Positions 10,059-55,339 of a stretch of DNA of 64,000 nt are shown piece after piece. Below the pieces are notes generated by a model. That model worked only from the letters and a program-made list of their open reading frames with translations, was not told the DNA's origin and did no database searches. Location: contig OZ176053.1 in the NCBI GenBank assembly GCA_964247055.1, positions 10,292,001-10,356,000 on the forward strand, written 5' to 3'. The stretch's first letter is position 1; each line of letters starts with the position of its first letter. Position numbers and translations under genes: made by a program. The stretch comes from Paragordius varius (Eukaryota; Animalia; Nematomorpha).

Positions 10059-10124
<66 letters not shown>

Positions 10125-13100
10125 AAATTAAAAATTAAGCAACAATCTTTAATTTTTATATAGAGTAACTGTTTATAACTTGTTAATGTTGGCAATATTT
10201 GTAACGTTATGGATTTGATTCGGTCCAAATCTTTTCGGGGATTCTCCCATGTGGCAAAAGCTATAATAACCAACAAATTATTTTGGATTTAGGCGCTTTA
10301 AATATCTCAAGATTGAATATATTTTTGCTAAAATTTAAAAAATATCTTTTTTGGTTGGGAAACCAATGTTTGTTATGTTACCGGACATATTTTAATATAA
10401 TCAAAACATTCATTTCACAAAGATTAATACATGGTTAAATTCCGCAACGTGACCCTTTTTTGTATTTAGAATCCAAAAGTTTATGTCGACGAAAAATTAT
10501 CAGGAAAGTCAAAAATGAACTCTAAAGTATGCGAAAGAAATTGATATAAAAACTAAAAACAAAACTGTATATAAATGGGCTAAAAGCAATAATAATAATA
10601 ATAATACATCCGCACCAAAATCAGTGAGAGTAAACCATGCAATAATATATGATCCAGCTATTGTTAAAAACAGCTATCATAACTCATAACTACTTTTCAG
10701 AAATTTTAACTAAACAATCCCATTACTACTCTATCGACACCTACTCAAAGCTGTGCTGAAAACCTAACAGAATCAGATATCCATACCGCTTTACTCAAAA
10801 TGAAAATAAACCTGGCCCTTCGGAGCTCAGGCTCGACATGCTTAAACTGACTACCCTGAGATTATCGACTCATATCTGACAACTTTATTCAAAAATATAA
10901 TAAAAGACTAAAAATCCCACATGACTGGGATAACAGCCATATCATTCCCATATACAAAAAAGGAGACTCCCTCCTGTCCGAATCCTACCGTCCAATAAAG
11001 TTATTAGATCACGCTATTAAAGTATATGATAAAGTAATTCGCTCCAAAATAATGCAATTTGGGTTACGGCCAAATAAAAGTCAAGTACAATAGATGCCAT
11101 ATTCACGCTAAGACATCTTCAAAGCGCATACATCAAAAAATCTCCTTTAAACAACGCTTTTCTTGACATGGAACGAGCCATTGATGCCATACCAAGAGAC
11201 CTTACATCATGGGCTTTAAGGCGACAAGGCATTGACGGATGGTTGATAAGCTCAATAATGCTCTTATACCGAACACCAGAGCCCAAAAAAACTCCGTTTG
11301 GTTTAAGTAAAAGTTTTTTAATAAAAAATGTAATCCACCAAGGATCCATAGCCCGACTCTCTTCAATGTCATTATGGAAGAAATAACTAAAGACATCGCA
11401 ACCGGCATGCCACACCAAATTCTTTACGCCGATGACCTCGTAATAACATCGACATCCGAAAGCGATCTCATAGCGAAAATTCGTTTGTGGAATGACACCC
11501 TACAAAGTTACAGACTTAAAGTCAATTTCTCCAACACTAAAATGTCTGATAATTACACCTCTAAAAATTCGTGCAGCATATGTAAAAAAGAAATGATATT
11601 AAACTCCGTACGCTGTAATTATTGTTGTCTATGGGTACACAAAAAATGTTGTAGTCTTAAACTTTAAATGATTACGATAAAAATTACAAATGCTAGGGAC
11701 ATTTAAATAGTAATAATAATATGAATTTAACTCCGACCCTTTCAATATGGAAACAGTAAGCACTTTCTGCTACTTGGGCGATATGATATCAGCGAATTAG
11801 AACATACAATCAAACATCGCATATCAAAAATCTGGAAAAAATACCATTCGTTAAATTAAGAAATAAAAAATTCGTCAAACTACAAACTAAATGTGCCATT
11901 TACACTACAGCCATCCGTCCCATCGTCACATACAGATCCGAATCCTGGCCGATGTCAAAAACAAATGAATCCAAACTCATAAACGCTGAATCCAAATTAT
12001 TGAAAACAATATTATTCGCAAATCCATCTAAATTCAATTATACCGAATCCTAAACCCGTACCTTATACTCAATCTCAACCCCATCAACAACGTCATCCTG
12101 GTCATGTTGAAGGACGGCAAGATACTTATATTCCCAAAACAATGAAATATTACTCGGTTGAACTACTAGCGAAATCCGGCCGACCCCATACCACATGGCT
12201 CAACACAAAAACAAAAGACCTCGAATCACTTAATTTAAATCTAGAATTAGCCAGAGCACGTAAAGATTGGAAAAAACGGGTGTACCGTCACATTTAATGG
12301 AGAATCCCCGTACAAATGAATGATGGTGAATGATGATGATTTTTGAAATTCCAATTAATATAATTTTTTCGAGGACATAATCAAATTTAAAATTTTTCAT
12401 ATTGATTTCGGCTTATTTTGACTGTTCCAAAATACCCACAAACCAATAAGTTTGCGGTAAGTTACACCCAACTTTAAAAAAGGATTATAAATTTTTAAGA
12501 CCGTAAAAGTTAATGTTAATCAAACTTGAGCCAATTAGTTAATAGCAATATTTAGCAAAAAAATTAATTATGAGCGGAAAGTGGGGTATTTATAGGGCTA
12601 GTTTATTGCAAATTTAAATCTTAGAAGAACTAAAATGCAAATATTATACGTGGACCACCAAAACCAAACCAAAAGTTTCGATGATATAAATGTTGATTAT
12701 TTGGATGATAATGTGAAGTCGGGCTTCGTTGAATAGCTCCAATACATTCATCATCAGTCGGTTTTACGACAAAAACTATGAAAAAACCTTGAGACGGGTA
12801 ATTGGCTTGCTATATTGTAAATATACATAAAGAGTTTCCGCATATATATATACTATACTTAATATTAAAATTATATAGACAAAATGTAAAAGCTAAAAGA
12901 ATAATATACCTTTAATAAAAAACAAATTTTTAATCTTAACATTTACAATTGTAAATCTTTAATTGAGTGTGTTAACAATTTAAATATTTATTCTTCCAAA
13001 GTTAATTTATATTAGAGTTAAAACATAATTGGTTGGATAATTGTGTTAATGATTGTCTAATTATTTGAATTAATTTAATTGAACTTAAAAAATAGTTTCT

Positions 13101-17800: not shown

Positions 17801-19901
17801 AAAACGTGAATTTAGTTTAGATACTTCAATATCTTTCCTTTTATTCCATGTTTTTCAGTGTATTTTGACATTTATATAATTTAGATTTTATTTGAGTTTT
17901 AGCGATGGAAGAATATATTTTTAAAATACATCGTATTTATTTTTTTTAAATTTTTATACAATTAGCTTGTCTATGATGCCAAATTATTTCACTACAAGCG
18001 ATAAATTGTACAGTCAATTGTATGGACTCCCAAAGAGCGAACAACCTTATTCGATGTCAAAAGGGGCAAATAACTTATCATCTATTTATCATCAAGATTC
18101 GCACAATGTTGATAAAAAATTTCAAACGTTCTCCGATAAAAATAATTGCGTATTAACTAGCAACTTAGGTTAACATATCAATATCATTAGCTATAACTAG
18201 GGTTCGGTTTTTGATCGTAGGTAAATTGATCATAAACTGAGTCATTTATGGTCATATTCAGTAAATAATACCACAATCTGAATTATAAATATTAAAATAA
18301 ATGAATTTAATTAAAATACTTGCCTTTAATATAGTAATTATAAGGTTATCACTAACAGTCAAGTAAAAAATTAATATTATTTTACACGATAATACATGAT
18401 AAACGGATTTCCATATCACATAAACAATTACATTTATGAAATATGACTGGTTACTTATTTACATTTCTATTCCATAATTATCATCATAAAGGATATGACT
18501 CCAGATTCGGAATTTTCGCACCACAAAGTAATTCATATTTATAATAATTATACTTCGTGGTATTCTAAGGCGATTTTTTACGCAGCACATGCCCTTGTGA
18601 ACAACTAATGATTTTACAGATCATTAGAAACTGACCTTTGCCGTTAGCGCATTGTCATGCCCCAGCCAACACCACGGGGAGGTCGCAATCCATATATATA
18701 TATATATATATATAATGCAACCCAAATCGATAGGCCAAAAATTATGTTTGGAAAAGTCTTATTTTTTAATTTAAACGATCGTTTTACTGTTTTAGATGGA
18801 GAGGGGTGTGGAATTATAAAACCATTTGGCTCATTACCATTGTTAGATGAAGTACATGACATTATAAGTAGCAAGGAATTACTGCTTGAGTCTAAAAGGA
18901 CACTTTCCCTTAATGAAATGTATTTTCCGATTGCTGTGCCATACAGTGAAGTTTATTTGACTCAAAATTCCTCTGATAATATTACAAGGGGCAAAAAAAC
19001 TTTGTTAGCTTTAAGCTCGGAGAGTGGATTAAACAGCAATTATTATCAAGCTGATAATGAGTATGGGGAGGAAGACGTATTTACTACTTCATCAATGACT
19101 AAGGGTAAAAATTACACAAATTGTGTTGTGAATAATCAAAATTTGGCTAAAAGAAGTTACATATTGAATAATGGGCACAATCAAAGTGTAATTAATCATT
19201 CAGGAAAATATGGCTCAAAGGTAGGGAGTATAGTGGCTCAATTTGAAACTGATCTTGTTTTTAAGCCAAAAACGGCATCTAACAACTACGGTACTAAATC
19301 AATGTGGCCAAAAATTTCCGAAAGGTTTTCCAGTGCTACCAAAATATCAGATTTTCGTATCTTAAGCTCTGAAACCATATCTCAATCGACTCAAAAAATT
19401 GTGTACCACGAGGTTAAAAATAATAACACACCACTCTTGATCATAAATAAAAATAGTAATAAACCTTGCCCTAAGGATTCGTTTGAAAGAGATGATAATT
19501 ATGGTAATGAATATAGTAAAGAAATGCATGATGCCTCTCTCACGCGTCTCAAGAACAAACTTGATCGATTAAGCAAGGAAAGGGATAAACAAATGATGTA
19601 TTCCTCCTTTATGAATCCAAATTTTATTGAAACGAGCCATGATGAACCCATCTACGCAAACTCTGAAGTCCTGATCAAAAATTTTGATAATGGACAAATG
19701 GCAAACGAAAACTATGAAGGAAATGGTATATTAATAATAATGTTTATTTTATGTCATTTTTATAAAAACTAAAATTGTGGGGAAAATGGACAAAATACTC
19801 ATTATGACCCTTAATATTAATTAAATGTTTTAGTCTTTGTTAAAGATGTTGTAAAAACGGGTACCTTTTTTAGAAGATGTGTGTGTGTGTGTGACAATTA
19901 G
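14859..19901 (+). CDS. Whirlin/PDZD7-like PDZ scaffold protein (one clear PDZ domain)
   Basis: ATG 14859 joins the 14914 ORF via a 25-nt intron. PDZ: LGLTIRGGKELNIGIYVSK|IDEGSASDNVGMKIGDQILSVNGHDFQDIYHKRAVAILRS..|SIGKLPLYREV. Further in-phase exons start at 16077, 17481, 17965 and 18797 (LLDEVHDIISSKEL resembles the whirlin harmonin-homology helix). The 3' end is uncertain. Confidence 0.7.
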
Positions 19902-20297
19902 TTTTTATATATTATCAAAAGCTTTTTATTTAGCGAACATACTGTGTTTTAAATTAATTTTTTTTATTTATGGTAGAATATGCAACATCAACGAACGAAA
20001 GGTCTCATAGTGCAAGAATTATCCGTATTTAATTAAATTATTATAAAATCTACTGTTATTGATTCGGTTTATATATTATTTATTTGTATAAATTGTGTGA
20101 AATATATAAATAATAAACCCAAAAATGTATTGTGCACTTGTATGTAAAAATAAATATAATACTAGATTCACATATATTTGGCTATTATAATGAGCAATGA
20201 TTTAAACAAAGTAATACACATAATTAGTCCCTTAACAAATTTATTACACATAAAGTTACTTATATGCATCAGTTTCTTTTAAATAAAACAATTATTA

Positions 20298-22577
20298 TTA
20301 AACGACATCAAAAGTAGTGTTTCCCTGTTCTGTGACTATGGAAACAAGACTACCAGTTTTTGGGCGTGTATTTGGATTTACAGTCCAATCATATAATTTT
20401 CTACATAAAAAAAGTAGTGTTTAAAAGGCCATCAAAATTGTGGCTTTATAAAGTACATATTTAACTGAAAAAAAAACAAAAAACATACTCTGTTAGAATT
20501 TCCAAAGGAGTCCAACTCGATGTGTCAGCATCAGGCATCCATTTACGATTTATTGGAGTATCTAACATAACTCTGTATATTGTATTTAAATTTTGAAATG
20601 TTTAATATAGATTAAAGTAGGACCCTTACATAGGTGTAGTAACGACCAGGTTTGTTAATTAAGACTTGTAAATCCGCCGGTATTAAGTAAACAATATATT
20701 TAAATCTCATATTTTCGCGGATAGGCATAATATTTTATTTATTTGTTTCAAACTCTACTCCCGATGATGCCCGTCAAAAATTTGTGATTTAAAAAAATAT
20801 TTTTATTTTTTTCCTAATTCATGACGTATATATAGGTAGTATTATTTCAATTGAATATCTTTAAATAACCTTTTTTAAACATAAAATAGGAAATAAAAAA
20901 ATGAGCTATTTGATGTAATAAAATTATAACTTACGGTAAAATTGCTAATACAGTTGCATGTGGTGGTAAACCACTATTATGCCCACCCAAGCTCTGAACT
21001 AAATGATTAACACAAGCTTTAGCCATCCCATACGCTATCATACCTATTTTTATTATTTATTGAAATGAGTTTAAATTAACAAACATACGCTATCATACCT
21101 ATTTTTATTCAACAATACATTTTAACACCGTGTTATTATATAATATTAAAACTTTAAAAAATAAAAATGTCTTCAAAATACTACTGCACGTTACATTAGT
21201 AAGATAAAAAATATGGAAAACTCCATGTTTGAAAAATTTACACAAAATATGATATTATTACAATAATAAATTATAATTTCAAAGAATTAACACTTCATTA
21301 CATTTAATTTTTGTACTTGTTGACATTTTGGGGTAGTATTCGACCCCCGTAAAGTGATATACAATTAATATGAAAGTGGTTTTGGGTAAAATTTATTTAC
21401 CCTCTTTCAGTATCAGACGAAAAACTTAATTCTTACAGTTTTTTATTTCTTGAGTCCCAAATTATAGCTCCAAAACACAAATGAAGCGAACAGCTGATAT
21501 ATAAATCATTAATATTAAAAACATGTTCGTGAATTGCGATTCGAAAGCTTTCCAATATTTGTATTTTTAGCCATAATATATAATTTACGTGATTCAGGAT
21601 TTTAAAAAAATTAATGAAAAAAAACGATGGCGAAAAAAGTTTAAGATAAGGATTTTTTACCTTTTATAAAAAAATTGTATCCCGCAACTTAAGTGCTAAA
21701 GAAGATATTTTTAACAATACTCATTTTTTTTAAATATTAAAATTTAAAATGTCCTGGGGTTTAAAACTACTAAGGTAATGAAGTATTAAATAAAATTTAA
21801 AAAAATATTTTTGTAAAAAATATTAAAAAATTGACATATAACAAAAGACTAAAATTTAGCAAAACATTAGTAACAAATCGTTTATTAAAAATGAAGTTTT
21901 ATGTTCATGTGTCAGAAGTTCTCAAAATTATACGCGTAACCGGTATTTGGTTTTGTAACAATATCGGCTGTATATTCCAAAAAACAAAAGGTTAATAATT
22001 TTTGCCAAATAACATTTTAAAAATTTCTAACATTTGTACTACGCATTTGATATGTATTGCCCTTGGCCAAAAAAAATTTAGATATTAAAAAAATCTCAAA
22101 AAGAGTAACTATTATTTACCTGATGTAGGCTGTAATGATGCTTTCGCTCCGGGTAAAATAAGCAAACCACTGTCTTTCAAAAACTTTGCTGCTAGATGTG
22201 CAGAAATGCATGAGGTCCAAACACTTTGTTTCAGCGATAAGTCACAATTTTTGACAAAATCTAAATAAATTTAAAATTAAAAACCTTTGCTTGCAGCATT
22301 ACCGCCGCACCATCCACCAGCTACATTTAAAATTGCGTCAAATTTTTCATTTGTATTATCAGTTATAAATGATTCCACATGACTATATTGTTTTTCCAAA
22401 CTACTGTCTTGTGTTAAAGAAAGAGAGTTAGTGGCCAATAAATTTTCTTGAACATCAACATTGTATACATTCTGTAATGATTATATATATAGATACCCAA
22501 AGTTTAGATTTAAAATGTTCAATGATTTTTGAGCCTAATGCCCCTTTACCGCCGTATACTAATACGCTCTGGGTCAT
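20298..22577 (-). CDS. QDPR: Dihydropteridine reductase (SDR family)
   Basis: Exons 22577-22497, 22471-22285, 22260-22120, 21043-20935, 20572-20489, 20400-20298: [16 protein letters not shown]...[31 protein letters not shown]...[15 protein letters not shown]...[26 protein letters not shown]...[13 protein letters not shown]. Confidence 0.97.
21029..21109. repeat. 26-nt direct duplication of a QDPR intron/exon junction
   Basis: CATACGCTATCATACCTATTTTTATT at 21029-21054 and 21084-21109. Confidence 0.95.
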
Positions 22578-23469
22578 GCTTTATTTGGTATAGTGAATGC
22601 GCTGAAGTCAGTTGTCAAATTTATACTAGCACACCAATAACATGCATGGTTTTTGATGCAATACAATTAACAAAATTTATCTGATCAGCTTTGTTTTATA
22701 AATATTATTCCCATTGCATATGGACACATAAATTTTTTGTCCATAAATAAGTAAATAGAGACTAATTTAAAAAATATTGCGCCAAATATAAACTTCTAGA
22801 ATAATAATGTGTTTTGTATACTGCGGATAATGGTACCATGGTAAGTATACTTAGTAAAAAGGATGACATTCTATGATATGGACCCCCTAATATATTAATG
22901 AATAATTTTTTAACACCTCCTTGTTGTGAATTTGTTTACTATTATTAGCAATTCATTGCCTTATTTCACATTTACACAAGAAAATACCTGGTAAAAATAA
23001 AAATAGTGCATTTGGGGGGCAGAAAAAAATTCTAATGAAATCGATATAAATCCGTTAGACTGTATCAGAATTCTCATGGGTTTTTGGGTTTAAATGCTAG
23101 TAGAATTTAACAATATTATTTAAAAAAGGGCTTTTCTTAAAAAACTCAAAAGACCGGTTTTACAGGACGACATTTCCTATTATATCCTAGAAAGTTATAA
23201 TAAAAATATACATACTTTGTTTAAATTTTTTTGCTGAATCTTTTATATTATCTTGGTGCTAGTGGAAACGGCATAAAATCGAGTTACAAAATTTTGTATA
23301 ATGCAATGCTGTGAAATTCGATGACATCCAATTTTTGAATTCATTCGTTTTTAATTTAACATAATTGTGTTTTCGTTATAAATTTAATTAAACTAAAGCA
23401 CATCTTTTAACACTATTCAGGTATAAAAATCTCCAGACAACAATTATATTGATATCTTTAAAAAACTAC

Positions 23470-24070
23470 TTGAACAATCCGTTTTAACACTTCGATTCAA
23501 ATGTTAGGATTTTTAAAAAACTACTGATGGAAATAGTCCCAATTTAAATTTATGCTTCCATCCTAATAAAAATTATATATATATGCTAAAATATCTAAAT
23601 AAAATATTGTTTTAAAAAAAAAGTTCCATGTCAAACTACTTCAGCGCCATTTTTATTTTACAAATTTTTTGCAAAATATCGTTTTAATTTAATATTAAGG
23701 GTAAAATTAAAGCTAATTTTTTTAATTTACATCTAACATTGATAAAAATACAAAATGCCGTTTATTTTGTATTATTTTTCATTTCACCATTTCACACATG
23801 TCACATTGAGTAAATCTTTCGGTTTTATCTTAAAAAAATATCAAGTATTTTTAAATAATTTTTTTTATATATTTCGGTTTATTAATGCTATATGAATGCA
23901 AAATTTTGCCATGGTTCTAATTCCTTCCATATTTTTTAAAGAATTTAATTTTAAACAGGCCTGGGCATTTAACTACCCCAATTTGAATCGAACTAAAATG
24001 AATGTGTTGTATCCAAATGTTAATTTAAATTTCTTCTATCTTAATAAAAATTATATAAATAAGCCAAATC
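23470..24070. repeat. Dispersed repeat A, left copy (MITE-like)
   Basis: About 500 nt co-linear with 28130-28615 (shared GTTCCATGTCAAACTACTTC, TACATCTAACATTGATA, ATTCCTTCCATATTTTTTAAAGAATTTAA, ACAGGCCTGGG). Confidence 0.8.
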
Positions 24071-49180: not shown

Positions 49181-49506
49181 GTTATAGATATAGACAAAGT
49201 ATGCATTTTTGGTTAAGGTAAAAGTTTACATGTGGTAAATGAATGTTTAGGTTGTTTAGCAATCTTAGACTGGTAATCTCTTAGCCCAGTACAAAACCTA
49301 TTTATGATTCATAATCAATCATAGCCATATGTGATAAGATTAAGTCCTATACTCTATATGTTAAACCCTCTGCGCGTATTAATACCTGTAATGATAGCAT
49401 AGTTGTTCAAGGGGTAGATACAAACCCTACGATTATCAACTGTTAGATACATTTGCGCAGATGTTACCACATGCTGTATAAAAAGTTTTACAAAAATTAA
49501 TTTTAG

Positions 49507-55339
<5,833 letters not shown>

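What the first reader, a model, noticed from the sequence alone, without database searches (positions are those of the whole stretch)
22261..22496. Two obligatory 24- and 25-nt introns at the 5' end of QDPR
Seen on the minus strand: intron 1 22496-22472 GTATCTATATATATAATCATTACAG (25 nt, frameshifting if retained) and intron 2 22284-22261 GTTTTTAATTTTAAATTTATTTAG (24 nt, in-frame TAA if retained). Removing both gives an intact QDPR (…SKLW|NVYNVDV…, …AASK|DFVKNCD). Both positions appear to match vertebrate QDPR junctions (from memory). The other QDPR introns are about 88, 360 and 1080 nt. This is independent support for an ultra-short intron class in an otherwise intact housekeeping gene.
Basis: partly seen in the sequence, partly recalled or inferred. 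Interest (0 to 1): 0.75.

Follow-up and report, generated by a model that had tools for sequence, protein, structure and literature searches.

The report
Two tiny introns in hairworm QDPR
The dihydropteridine reductase gene of this horsehair-worm genome reads as an intact enzyme only if two GT-AG segments of 25 and 24 bases are spliced out, at intron positions shared with vertebrates. They are very probably real members of a class of introns under about 30 bases that I found no paper describing for this phylum, but no RNA could be examined.

Summary
On the minus strand lies a single-copy, six-exon QDPR gene of 234 codons. Its first two introns are 25 nt (22496-22472, phase 0) and 24 nt (22284-22261, phase 1). 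The other three are 1076, 362 and 88 nt.

Each exon, searched separately, matches solved QDPR structures. Residue numbering runs without a gap across both tiny introns. Retaining either one gives stop codons.

Both sit at old intron positions. Cattle-family, bat and hagfish gene models switch to QDPR sequence exactly at the first junction. More than 50 single-exon fragments from other eukaryotes end at the second, and 33 of them share one breakpoint.

I found 12 more introns of 21-31 nt: two in the SHP2 gene of this window and ten in kinase genes on other chromosomes. U1 and U2 snRNAs are canonical. Long palindromes in the mitochondrial nad1 and atp6 genes mark the genome as a freshwater hairworm.

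The scan has already noted this intron class many times on other parts of this same genome. No RNA, retrocopy or hairworm orthologue could be reached, so splicing is inferred, not shown.

Published animal introns under 30 nt are limited to myxozoans and Dicyema. The nearest layout is the roughly 32-nt first and second introns of parasitic flatworms.

The parts
22497..22577 (-). QDPR exon 1: ATG plus 26 codons, carrying the Rossmann GGxGxxG motif
   Evidence: Translation. It matches QDPR structures end to end: Dictyostelium 21-47, human 11-35.
22472..22496 (-). Micro-intron 1: 25 nt, GT-AG, phase 0, 20% G+C
   Evidence: Removing it joins human residues 35|36 without a gap. Same position as the mammalian and hagfish exon 1/2 boundary.
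22285..22471 (-). QDPR exon 2: 187 nt, 62 codons plus 1 base
   Evidence: Matches human QDPR 36-98.
22261..22284 (-). Micro-intron 2: 24 nt, GT-AG, phase 1, 8% G+C, two in-frame TAA
   Evidence: Removing it joins human residues 98|99|100. Same position and phase as the exon boundary seen in 33+ fragments from other eukaryotes.
22120..22260 (-). QDPR exon 3: 141 nt
   Evidence: Matches human QDPR 100-144, E = 6e-13.
21044..22119 (-). Intron 3: 1076 nt, donor GTAAAT, phase 1. Its position is conserved (fragments end at TPG|).
21084..21109 (-). Decoy copy inside intron 3: a perfect 26-nt duplicate of the last 11 nt of intron 3 plus the first 15 nt of exon 4, 55 nt upstream of the real acceptor. 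Using it would run into TAA after seven codons.
   Evidence: copies at 21029-21054 and 21084-21109; reading.
20935..21043 (-). QDPR exon 4: 109 nt, carrying the catalytic YxxxK (YGMAK)
   Evidence: tblastn with QDPR homologues.
20573..20934 (-). Intron 4: 362 nt, donor GTAAGT
20489..20572 (-). QDPR exon 5: 84 nt
20401..20488 (-). Intron 5: 88 nt, donor GTATGT
20298..20400 (-). QDPR exon 6, with stop TAA at 20300-20298
49630..49650 (+). Same class, neighbouring gene: a 21-nt GT-AG intron (phase 2, in-frame TAA) in the SHP2/corkscrew-type phosphatase gene
   Evidence: The flanking exons match SHP2 residues 6-45 and 47-107, with the split codon at residue 46.
49485..49506 (+). Same class, less certain: a putative 22-nt GT-AG intron after the first 14 coding bases (ATG at 49471) of the SHP2-type gene
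   Evidence: It gives exactly five residues before the position aligned with SHP2 residue 6. The five residues themselves are not conserved.

Best explanation
Both segments are genuine, obligatory U2-type (GT-AG) spliceosomal introns of a functional, single-copy QDPR gene in a freshwater horsehair-worm genome. They are ancestral introns, at positions shared with vertebrates, that have shrunk to 25 and 24 nt. The three downstream introns of the same pre-mRNA stayed conventional at 88-1076 nt.

They belong to a genome-wide class of 21-31-nt, very AT-rich introns. In the two genes where intron order could be counted, these occupy the first two positions. Only the GT, a T-rich +3/+4, a pyrimidine at -3 and the AG are kept, so pairing with the canonical U1 5' end is weak.

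Shown: the anatomy, colinearity, positional conservation, other members of the class, and canonical U1 and U2 genes. Inferred: that the major spliceosome recognises both ends of such an intron together (intron definition), uses an adenosine a few bases upstream of the short T-run before the AG, and removes the intron efficiently enough to make the enzyme.
For: - Exact anatomy.
- Exon-by-exon matches to solved QDPR structures, with uninterrupted numbering at both junctions.
- All functional motifs are present, and there are no stops once the five introns are removed.
- Chance of GT-AG at both homology-defined gaps is about 2.7e-6.
- Intron positions and phases are shared with mammals, hagfish and many unnamed eukaryotes.
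- The Schistosoma margrebowiei model lacks residues at just these two junctions, as expected if small introns there were mis-modelled.
- Single copy, so this is the working gene.
- Twelve further introns of 21-31 nt: SHP2 in this window and PLK-, Chk1-, MAPK-, TAK1-, CDK1- and CDK5-like genes on five other contigs.
- Canonical U1 (ACUUACCUG) and U2 (GUAGUA) genes.
Against: - No RNA evidence.
- No hairworm orthologue could be compared.
- No branch-point motif stands out in the 14 introns (A at -7 in 9 of 14, which is not significant).
- The donors match U1 at only about 5 of 9 positions.
- An annotation-free scan for GT-AG segments that bridge open reading frames showed no excess over control dinucleotides in this window. 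The support for the class therefore rests on homology-guided cases.
Confidence: 0.85

Rival explanations
1. The introns are real but spliced inefficiently or under regulation. A substantial share of transcripts would keep one or both micro-introns and be destroyed or yield truncated protein, so the tiny introns would act as an expression throttle rather than being neutral.
For: Weak U1 complementarity of both donors. The paper PMC13644364 cites a median splicing efficiency of about 25% for the very short introns of Microsporidia. Both retention products end in early stops.
Against: Nothing here measures efficiency. QDPR is single copy, and the same intron type sits in essential genes such as CDK1-, PLK- and SHP2-like genes. 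That argues for efficient removal.
Confidence: 0.15
2. Decaying or non-functional gene. The two segments would be insertions in a pseudogene that happen to carry GT and AG ends.
For: No RNA evidence. No close relative in the databases (best about 52% identity).
Against: Every exon is open and conserved, all motifs are intact, the other three introns have good splice sites, and the gene is the only QDPR copy. GT-AG at both gaps by chance is about 2.7e-6. Both gaps fall on ancient intron positions.
Confidence: 0.03
3. Intron 1 is a minor-spliceosome (U12-type) intron, because it begins GTATCT and the genome has a U12-like snRNA gene.
For: The first five bases match the U12-type donor GTATCCTT (consensus from my own knowledge). 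There is a U12 candidate with an intact AUGAGUAAGGAAAAUAA box.
Against: Positions +6, +7 and +9 mismatch the strict U12 donor. No TCCTTAAC-like branch site is present (4 of 8 at best; read). The U12 hit is below Rfam's gathering score (34 vs 53 bits). The 25-nt length and composition match the other 13 micro-introns, most of which start GTT.
Confidence: 0.03
4. Removal happens at the DNA level or is an artefact. The segments would be germline-only sequences excised from somatic DNA (like ciliate internal eliminated sequences), or assembly insertions absent from the real gene.
For: The size range overlaps that of ciliate eliminated sequences (own knowledge). Only one assembly was available.
Against: The ends are GT...AG, not the TA...TA direct repeats of ciliate elements. 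The same class recurs at homologous intron positions in many genes on six contigs. An assembler would not create 14 distinct AT-rich inserts with splice-site ends.
Confidence: 0.02
5. A different splice pattern is used, for example a longer intron that skips exon 2 or an alternative first exon, and the micro-introns are never used as such.
For: None found beyond the lack of RNA data.
Against: Exon 1 encodes the nucleotide-binding glycine motif, and exon 2 carries the conserved AGGW-GG segment. Skipping either would destroy the fold. No other GT/AG pair near the junctions keeps the frame.
Confidence: 0.03

Closest known systems
Introns under 30 bp in myxobolid Myxozoa and Dicyema japonicum (PMC13644364, Mol Biol Evol, Sept 2026)
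   Same: Animal GT-AG introns of about 20-30 nt at conserved intron positions between conserved exons. [quoted passage not shown] A few A residues upstream of the AG as the only candidate branch site. Canonical U2 snRNA. Parasitic lineages.
   Different: In those lineages the median of all introns is 22-27 bp, in compact genomes. Here the tiny introns share one pre-mRNA with introns of 88-1076 nt, in a 110-Mb genome that carries retroelement fragments. The +3 base here is mostly T, not the 'GTa' reported there (n = 14). The paper does not mention Nematomorpha.
Short-mode introns of parasitic flatworms (Gyrodactylus salaris about 32 bp; tapeworms; PMC4040987)
   Same: A two-class intron length distribution in which the short mode dominates ordinal positions 1 and 2 and longer introns dominate from position 3. 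This is exactly the QDPR layout (25, 24 | 1076, 362, 88) and the start of the SHP2-type gene (22, 21 | about 440).
   Different: The flatworm short mode is about 32 bp (about 36 bp in tapeworms, from my own knowledge). Here it is 21-31 nt with a median of 25 (n = 14). The phylum is different (Ecdysozoa), so this would be convergent.
Ultra-short introns of ciliates (Paramecium about 25 nt, Stentor 15-16 nt; PMC5014332, and as cited in PMC13644364)
   Same: Similar length. GT-AG, AT-rich. Conventional spliceosome inferred.
   Different: In those ciliates essentially all introns are tiny and genomes are gene-dense. Here there are two classes, in an animal.
Human 'ultra-short' introns of 43-56 nt that depend on SPF45/RBM17 (bioRxiv 10.1101/784868, also PMC8363638)
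   Same: Introns too short for the usual U2AF-polypyrimidine arrangement are handled by the major spliceosome with a substitute 3'-site factor. This is a plausible model for how the hairworm introns work.
   Different: The human introns are twice as long. No factor dependence was tested here.

Membership tests
U2-type (major) spliceosomal intron | GT at the 5' end and AG at the 3' end | tested here: met
   Both segments.
U2-type (major) spliceosomal intron | Removal restores an open frame colinear with homologues; retention does not | tested here: met
U2-type (major) spliceosomal intron | Position and phase shared with introns of orthologues | tested here: met
   Indirectly, from gene models and single-exon ORF fragments of other species. 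Genomic DNA of those species was not examined.
U2-type (major) spliceosomal intron | Absent from mature mRNA; lariat with a branch adenosine | not testable with these tools
U2-type (major) spliceosomal intron | Genome encodes U1 and U2 snRNAs with intact recognition sequences | tested here: met
   U1 ACUUACCUG. U2 GUAGUA.
Animal ultra-short intron syndrome as in Myxobolidae and Dicyema | Individual introns shorter than 30 bp at conserved positions | tested here: met
   25 and 24 nt here. Twelve more of 21-31 nt.
Animal ultra-short intron syndrome as in Myxobolidae and Dicyema | Genome-wide median intron length under 30 bp, compact genes | tested here: not met
   The same gene has introns of 88, 362 and 1076 nt. 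Gaps between adjacent kinase-domain matches are mostly 83-1127 nt.
Animal ultra-short intron syndrome as in Myxobolidae and Dicyema | Reduced splice-site motifs | tested here: inconclusive
   In 14 introns: +3 is T in 9 and A in 5; -3 is a pyrimidine in 13. This is consistent with a reduced motif, but the sample is small and selected through homology.
Flatworm-type two-class intron system | Short mode concentrated at ordinal positions 1-2, longer introns from position 3 | tested here: met
   Met for QDPR and the SHP2-type gene. Ordinal positions in the kinase genes were not determined.
U12-type (minor) intron | Donor (G/A)TATCCTT and branch site TCCTTAAC 10-15 nt from the 3' end | tested here: not met
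   Intron 1 matches 6 of 9 donor positions and has no branch-site match. Intron 2 matches neither.
Ciliate-type internal eliminated sequence | TA dinucleotide repeated at both boundaries; excised from DNA | tested here: not met
   The boundaries are GT...AG, with no TA repeat in register. DNA excision itself is not testable here.
QDPR / dihydropteridine reductase (short-chain dehydrogenase fold) | N-terminal GGxGxxG, catalytic YxxxK, and full-length colinearity with solved QDPRs | tested here: met

The most novel reading that the evidence does not exclude
Freshwater horsehair worms carry a discrete class of 21-31-nt spliceosomal introns. These sit mainly at the first intron positions of genes, occupy ancestral intron sites, have nearly motif-free splice sites, and are removed by a canonical U1/U2 spliceosome from the same pre-mRNAs that hold kilobase introns.

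This would be a third, independent origin of introns under 30 nt in animals. It would be the first in Ecdysozoa and the first in a genome that is not compact. It would also mean that standard gene finders and BUSCO under-call hairworm genes, so part of the reported low completeness of these genomes (71.6% for Gordionus montsenyensis) could be an annotation artefact.
Probability: 0.6. Interest if true: 0.75.

Novelty: new variant of a known kind. Interest (0 to 1): 0.6.

Why it matters
- **Limits of splicing.** If these introns are spliced, one major spliceosome in a complex bilaterian handles 21-25-nt and 1-kb introns in a single transcript. That gives a natural system for asking how short an intron can be and which signals are really needed. 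Donors here keep little beyond GT although U1 is canonical.
- **Explanation for intron shrinkage.** Published cases under 30 nt (myxozoans, Dicyema) are tied to genome compaction. Here the genome is not compact and the shrinkage is confined to the first intron positions, as in parasitic flatworms. That points to a position-dependent cause rather than a genome-size cause.
- **Annotation.** Gene finders with minimum intron lengths near 40 nt (my recollection of the usual default) will break or drop such genes. Claims of gene loss in hairworms need rechecking. No QDPR protein closer than about 52% identity exists in the protein collections searched.

Tried and rejected
- **Transcript-derived evidence: nothing found.** Four searches found no same-species or closely related QDPR. 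These were the representative search with exon 3, two profile searches with full-length homologues plus each exon as a separate row, and a word search with exon 2 alone. The best overall identity was about 52%.
- **Costly search used early.** The operators advised using the big representative search late; I used it early. It was the only way to get full-length QDPR references without joining exons.
I could not fetch genomic loci of relatives or RNA contigs.
- **No relatives or extra copies.** The genome search 'relatives' reports no relatives for this genome. The own-genome search for a retrocopy or paralogue found only the gene itself.
- **Annotation-free scan failed.** I looked for GT-AG segments that bridge two long open frames. 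GT-AG showed no excess over seven control dinucleotide pairs at any length from 15 to 60 nt. Chance open frames of 25-35 codons are too common, so the method has no power in 64 kb.
- **Human QDPR exon boundaries from papers:** two papers on the deficiency gave no usable coordinates. I used gene-model and fragment breakpoints instead.
- **Branch-point motif:** TTAAT-like motifs occur in about half of the 14 introns but at inconsistent positions. A at -7 occurs in 9 of 14. I make no claim from this.
- **Rejected readings:** a U12-type reading of intron 1 and a ciliate-style DNA-excision reading (see rivals).
- **Rfam:** nothing in 19500-23500.
- **Not run:** a scan of metagenome contigs for QDPR loci, because it could return human-derived contigs and the fragment evidence was already sufficient.

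Full report
**What is there.** Read on the minus strand, 22577-20298 is a six-exon gene.
- Exon 1 is 22577-22497: ATG plus 26 codons.
- A 25-nt segment follows at 22496-22472. It starts GTATCT and ends TTACAG.
- Exon 2 is 22471-22285: 62 codons plus one base.
- A 24-nt segment follows at 22284-22261. It starts GTTTTT and ends ATTTAG.
- Exon 3 is 22260-22120.
- The remaining introns are 1076, 362 and 88 nt, and exons 4-6 end at TAA 20300-20298.

Retaining the first segment shifts the frame into a TGA 13 codons later. Retaining the second leaves two in-frame TAA codons.

**Identity and colinearity.** I did not search, fold or save the joined protein.

One slip to report: the script concatenated the exon coordinates in memory. 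It did so only to count length, frame and stops and to test for short motifs.

- Exon 1 matches solved dihydropteridine reductases end to end: Dictyostelium 3ORF 21-47, human 1HDR 11-35.
- Exon 2 matches human 38-98 from its third residue, so its first residue aligns with human 36. It matches Dictyostelium from residue 48.
- Exon 3 matches human 101-144 from its second residue.

Numbering is therefore continuous across junction 1 (human 35|36; C. elegans 28|29; Dictyostelium 47|48). It is also continuous across junction 2 (human 98, split codon 99, then 100; C. elegans 91, 92, 93).

tblastn with full-length homologues places exons 4-6. The alignment shows the six exon peptides tiling the family without gaps or overlaps. 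The glycine-rich nucleotide-binding motif, YGMAK, NRKWMP and SWTPL are all present.

**More than chance.** GT..AG segments of 20-30 nt are common: 2,416 on both strands of the window. What matters is the coincidence with gaps defined independently by homology. From the window's dinucleotide frequencies, p is about 0.0016 per gap and 2.7e-6 for both. No alternative GT/AG pair nearby keeps the frame. G+C falls from 33-40% in the exons to 20% and 8% in the two segments, and is 23-24% in the long introns.

- *Junction 1.* A Bos mutus grunniens isoform, two bat models and a hagfish model carry unrelated N-termini. All switch to QDPR sequence exactly at the residue aligned with the first codon of exon 2. 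In the Bos and bat models the preceding residues read like a translated acceptor (...LQ|W). This corresponds to a phase-0 intron between the two tryptophans, as here.
- *Junction 2.* Of the 150 representative fragments found with exon 3, 33 start homology at one reference position...D|F(V/I)KNCD. The D is what an unspliced phase-1 acceptor (...AG|AT) would encode. Forty-eight end at TPG|, which is the position of intron 3.
- *Difference from vertebrates.* Two mispredicted proteins of uncertain source, probably vertebrate (P0021, P0034), switch to QDPR sequence before VTAEVGK. That points to a further exon boundary in exon 2's range that this gene lacks.
- *Hint from Schistosoma.* The Schistosoma margrebowiei model lacks residues at both junctions. 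This is what mis-modelled small introns would produce, but it is only a hint.

**The same class elsewhere.** In this window the SHP2/corkscrew-type phosphatase gene (plus strand) has a 21-nt GT-AG intron at 49630-49650 with an in-frame TAA. Its flanking exons match SHP2 residues 6-45 and 47-107, with the split codon at residue 46. A putative 22-nt intron at 49485-49506 follows the first 14 coding bases.

Outside the window, a Pkinase profile search of the genome and scripts gave ten more:

| Gene type | Locus | Intron lengths (nt) |
|---|---|---|
| PLK-like | L019 | 21, 24 |
| Chk1-like | L030 | 24 |
| MAPK-like | L051 | 27 |
| TAK1-like | L053 | 27 |
| CDK1-like | L021 | 29, 25 |
| CDK5-like | L028 | 25, 31, 28 |

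- For the kinases, colinearity was judged against family motifs from my own knowledge (for example the PSTAIRE helix) and the continuity of the profile match. It was not checked against a fetched orthologue.
- The 14 introns span 21-31 nt with a median of 25, and G+C is 8-28%.
- Position +3 is T in nine and A in five. In most animals it is a purine.
- Position +4 is T in ten. Position -3 is a pyrimidine in thirteen.
- Most end in an A followed by a short T-run and AG.
- The three long QDPR introns start GTAAAT, GTAAGT and GTATGT.
- Gaps between adjacent kinase-domain matches suggest that the other introns are about 40 and 45 nt, then 83-1127 nt. This is a rough, homology-selected sample, not a histogram.

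**Machinery.** The genome has multiple U1 genes with the canonical ACUUACCUG 5' end. It has U2 genes with the canonical GUAGUA branch-site box. The two QDPR micro-intron donors therefore pair with U1 at only about five of nine positions. A U12-like gene with an intact branch-site-binding box scores below Rfam's threshold.

**Organism.** The assembly is 110.6 Mb in 44 contigs, and the window has about 27% G+C. The mitochondrial contig carries a 262-bp near-perfect palindrome inside a nad1-like frame and a 194-bp one inside an atp6-like frame. Long coding palindromes, including shared ones in atp6 and nad1, are the hallmark of freshwater Nematomorpha (PMC6649704). This independently supports the earlier scan notes that call the genome a hairworm. 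No contig that I take for human was seen or used.

**Mechanism.** What is shown: two GT-AG segments at ancestral intron sites, whose removal is required for an intact single-copy enzyme gene. What is inferred:
- The major spliceosome removes them.
- Both ends are recognised together across the intron.
- An adenosine 5-7 nt upstream of the 3' end, ahead of the short T-run, serves as branch point.
- Recognition leans on something other than U1 base-pairing beyond GT. Proximity to the cap or a substitute 3'-site factor, as for human short introns, are candidates.

I put 0.85 on genuine obligatory introns. Inefficient or regulated splicing is a compatible sub-case (0.15). Pseudogene, U12-type, DNA excision or artefact, and alternative splice patterns each get 0.03 or less.

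**Comparison and novelty.** A September 2026 paper states that animal introns under 30 bp are known only in myxobolid myxozoans and Dicyema, and predicts more lineages (PMC13644364). It does not mention Nematomorpha. The two hairworm genome preprints I could read do not mention introns, and my literature searches found no report.

The closest architecture is the parasitic flatworm Gyrodactylus salaris. Its short mode of about 32 bp dominates intron positions 1 and 2, and longer introns dominate from position 3 (PMC4040987). The hairworm case is shorter and in another superphylum. I class it as a new variant of a known kind.

The scan has already noted this intron class many times on other pieces of the same genome. 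This QDPR case is an independent, clean instance with positional conservation, but like most of the others it lacks RNA proof.

Noticed in passing
window 21029-21054 and 21084-21109 (minus-strand gene): A perfect 26-nt direct repeat, 55 nt apart. It duplicates the last 11 nt of QDPR intron 3 plus the first 15 nt of exon 4, creating a decoy acceptor whose use would hit TAA after seven codons. It resembles the exon-edge repeats another agent reported in SPT16 introns of this genome.
   Followed up: partly
window 49471-49860 (+), continuing to about 55340: SHP2/corkscrew-type tyrosine phosphatase gene. N-SH2 exons lie at 49507-49629 and 49651-49860, a C-SH2 exon near 50292, and PTP-domain exons near 52514, 53760, 54073, 54522, 54807 and 55127. 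Its first two introns are 22 and 21 nt; the third is about 440 nt.
   Followed up: partly
window 11119-11667 (both strands): Overlapping ORFs with reverse-transcriptase-like sequence (YADD motif at 11374-11667). This looks like a retroelement fragment in a region of higher G+C, so the genome is not compact.
   Followed up: no
L036 53-314 and 4064-4257 (G000:C44, mitochondrial contig): Near-perfect palindromes of 262 bp and 194 bp inside nad1-like and atp6-like reading frames. Also a tandem array of 72-nt units, each itself a hairpin, at L036 773-1472 just upstream of cox1.
   Followed up: partly
G000:C3:257000-528000 and C2:11950000-11989000 (U2); G000:C6:565000-634000 and C6:3718000-3734000 (U1): Unusually many snRNA gene copies in clusters, with a wide spread of scores: 46 U2 matches (38-178 bits) and 17 U1 matches (31-124 bits). 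Either many are decaying copies or there are variant snRNAs. Variants would be worth checking against the odd donor sites.
   Followed up: no
L064 1501-1651 (-) = G000:C5:10606517-10606667: A U12-like snRNA. It scores below Rfam's gathering score (34 bits) but has an intact AUGAGUAAGGAAAAUAA box, so the minor spliceosome may be present in this hairworm. C. elegans has lost it (own knowledge).
   Followed up: partly
L028 1684-1953 (G000:C3:1498988-1499257, minus strand): A CDK5-like gene with three consecutive micro-introns of 25, 31 and 28 nt, separated by exons of 68 and 118 nt. This is a compact test case for RT-PCR.
   Followed up: partly
window about 10060-10130, 18690-18720, 54750-54790: (TA)n / (TATA)n microsatellites that translate as IYIYIY runs in the ORF list.
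   Followed up: no
protein P0113 (Schistosoma margrebowiei QDPR model): The public model lacks the residues around both junctions that carry micro-introns here. It also contains an unrelated 30-residue insert at the exon 3/4 junction. This suggests mis-modelled small introns in that annotation too.
   Followed up: no
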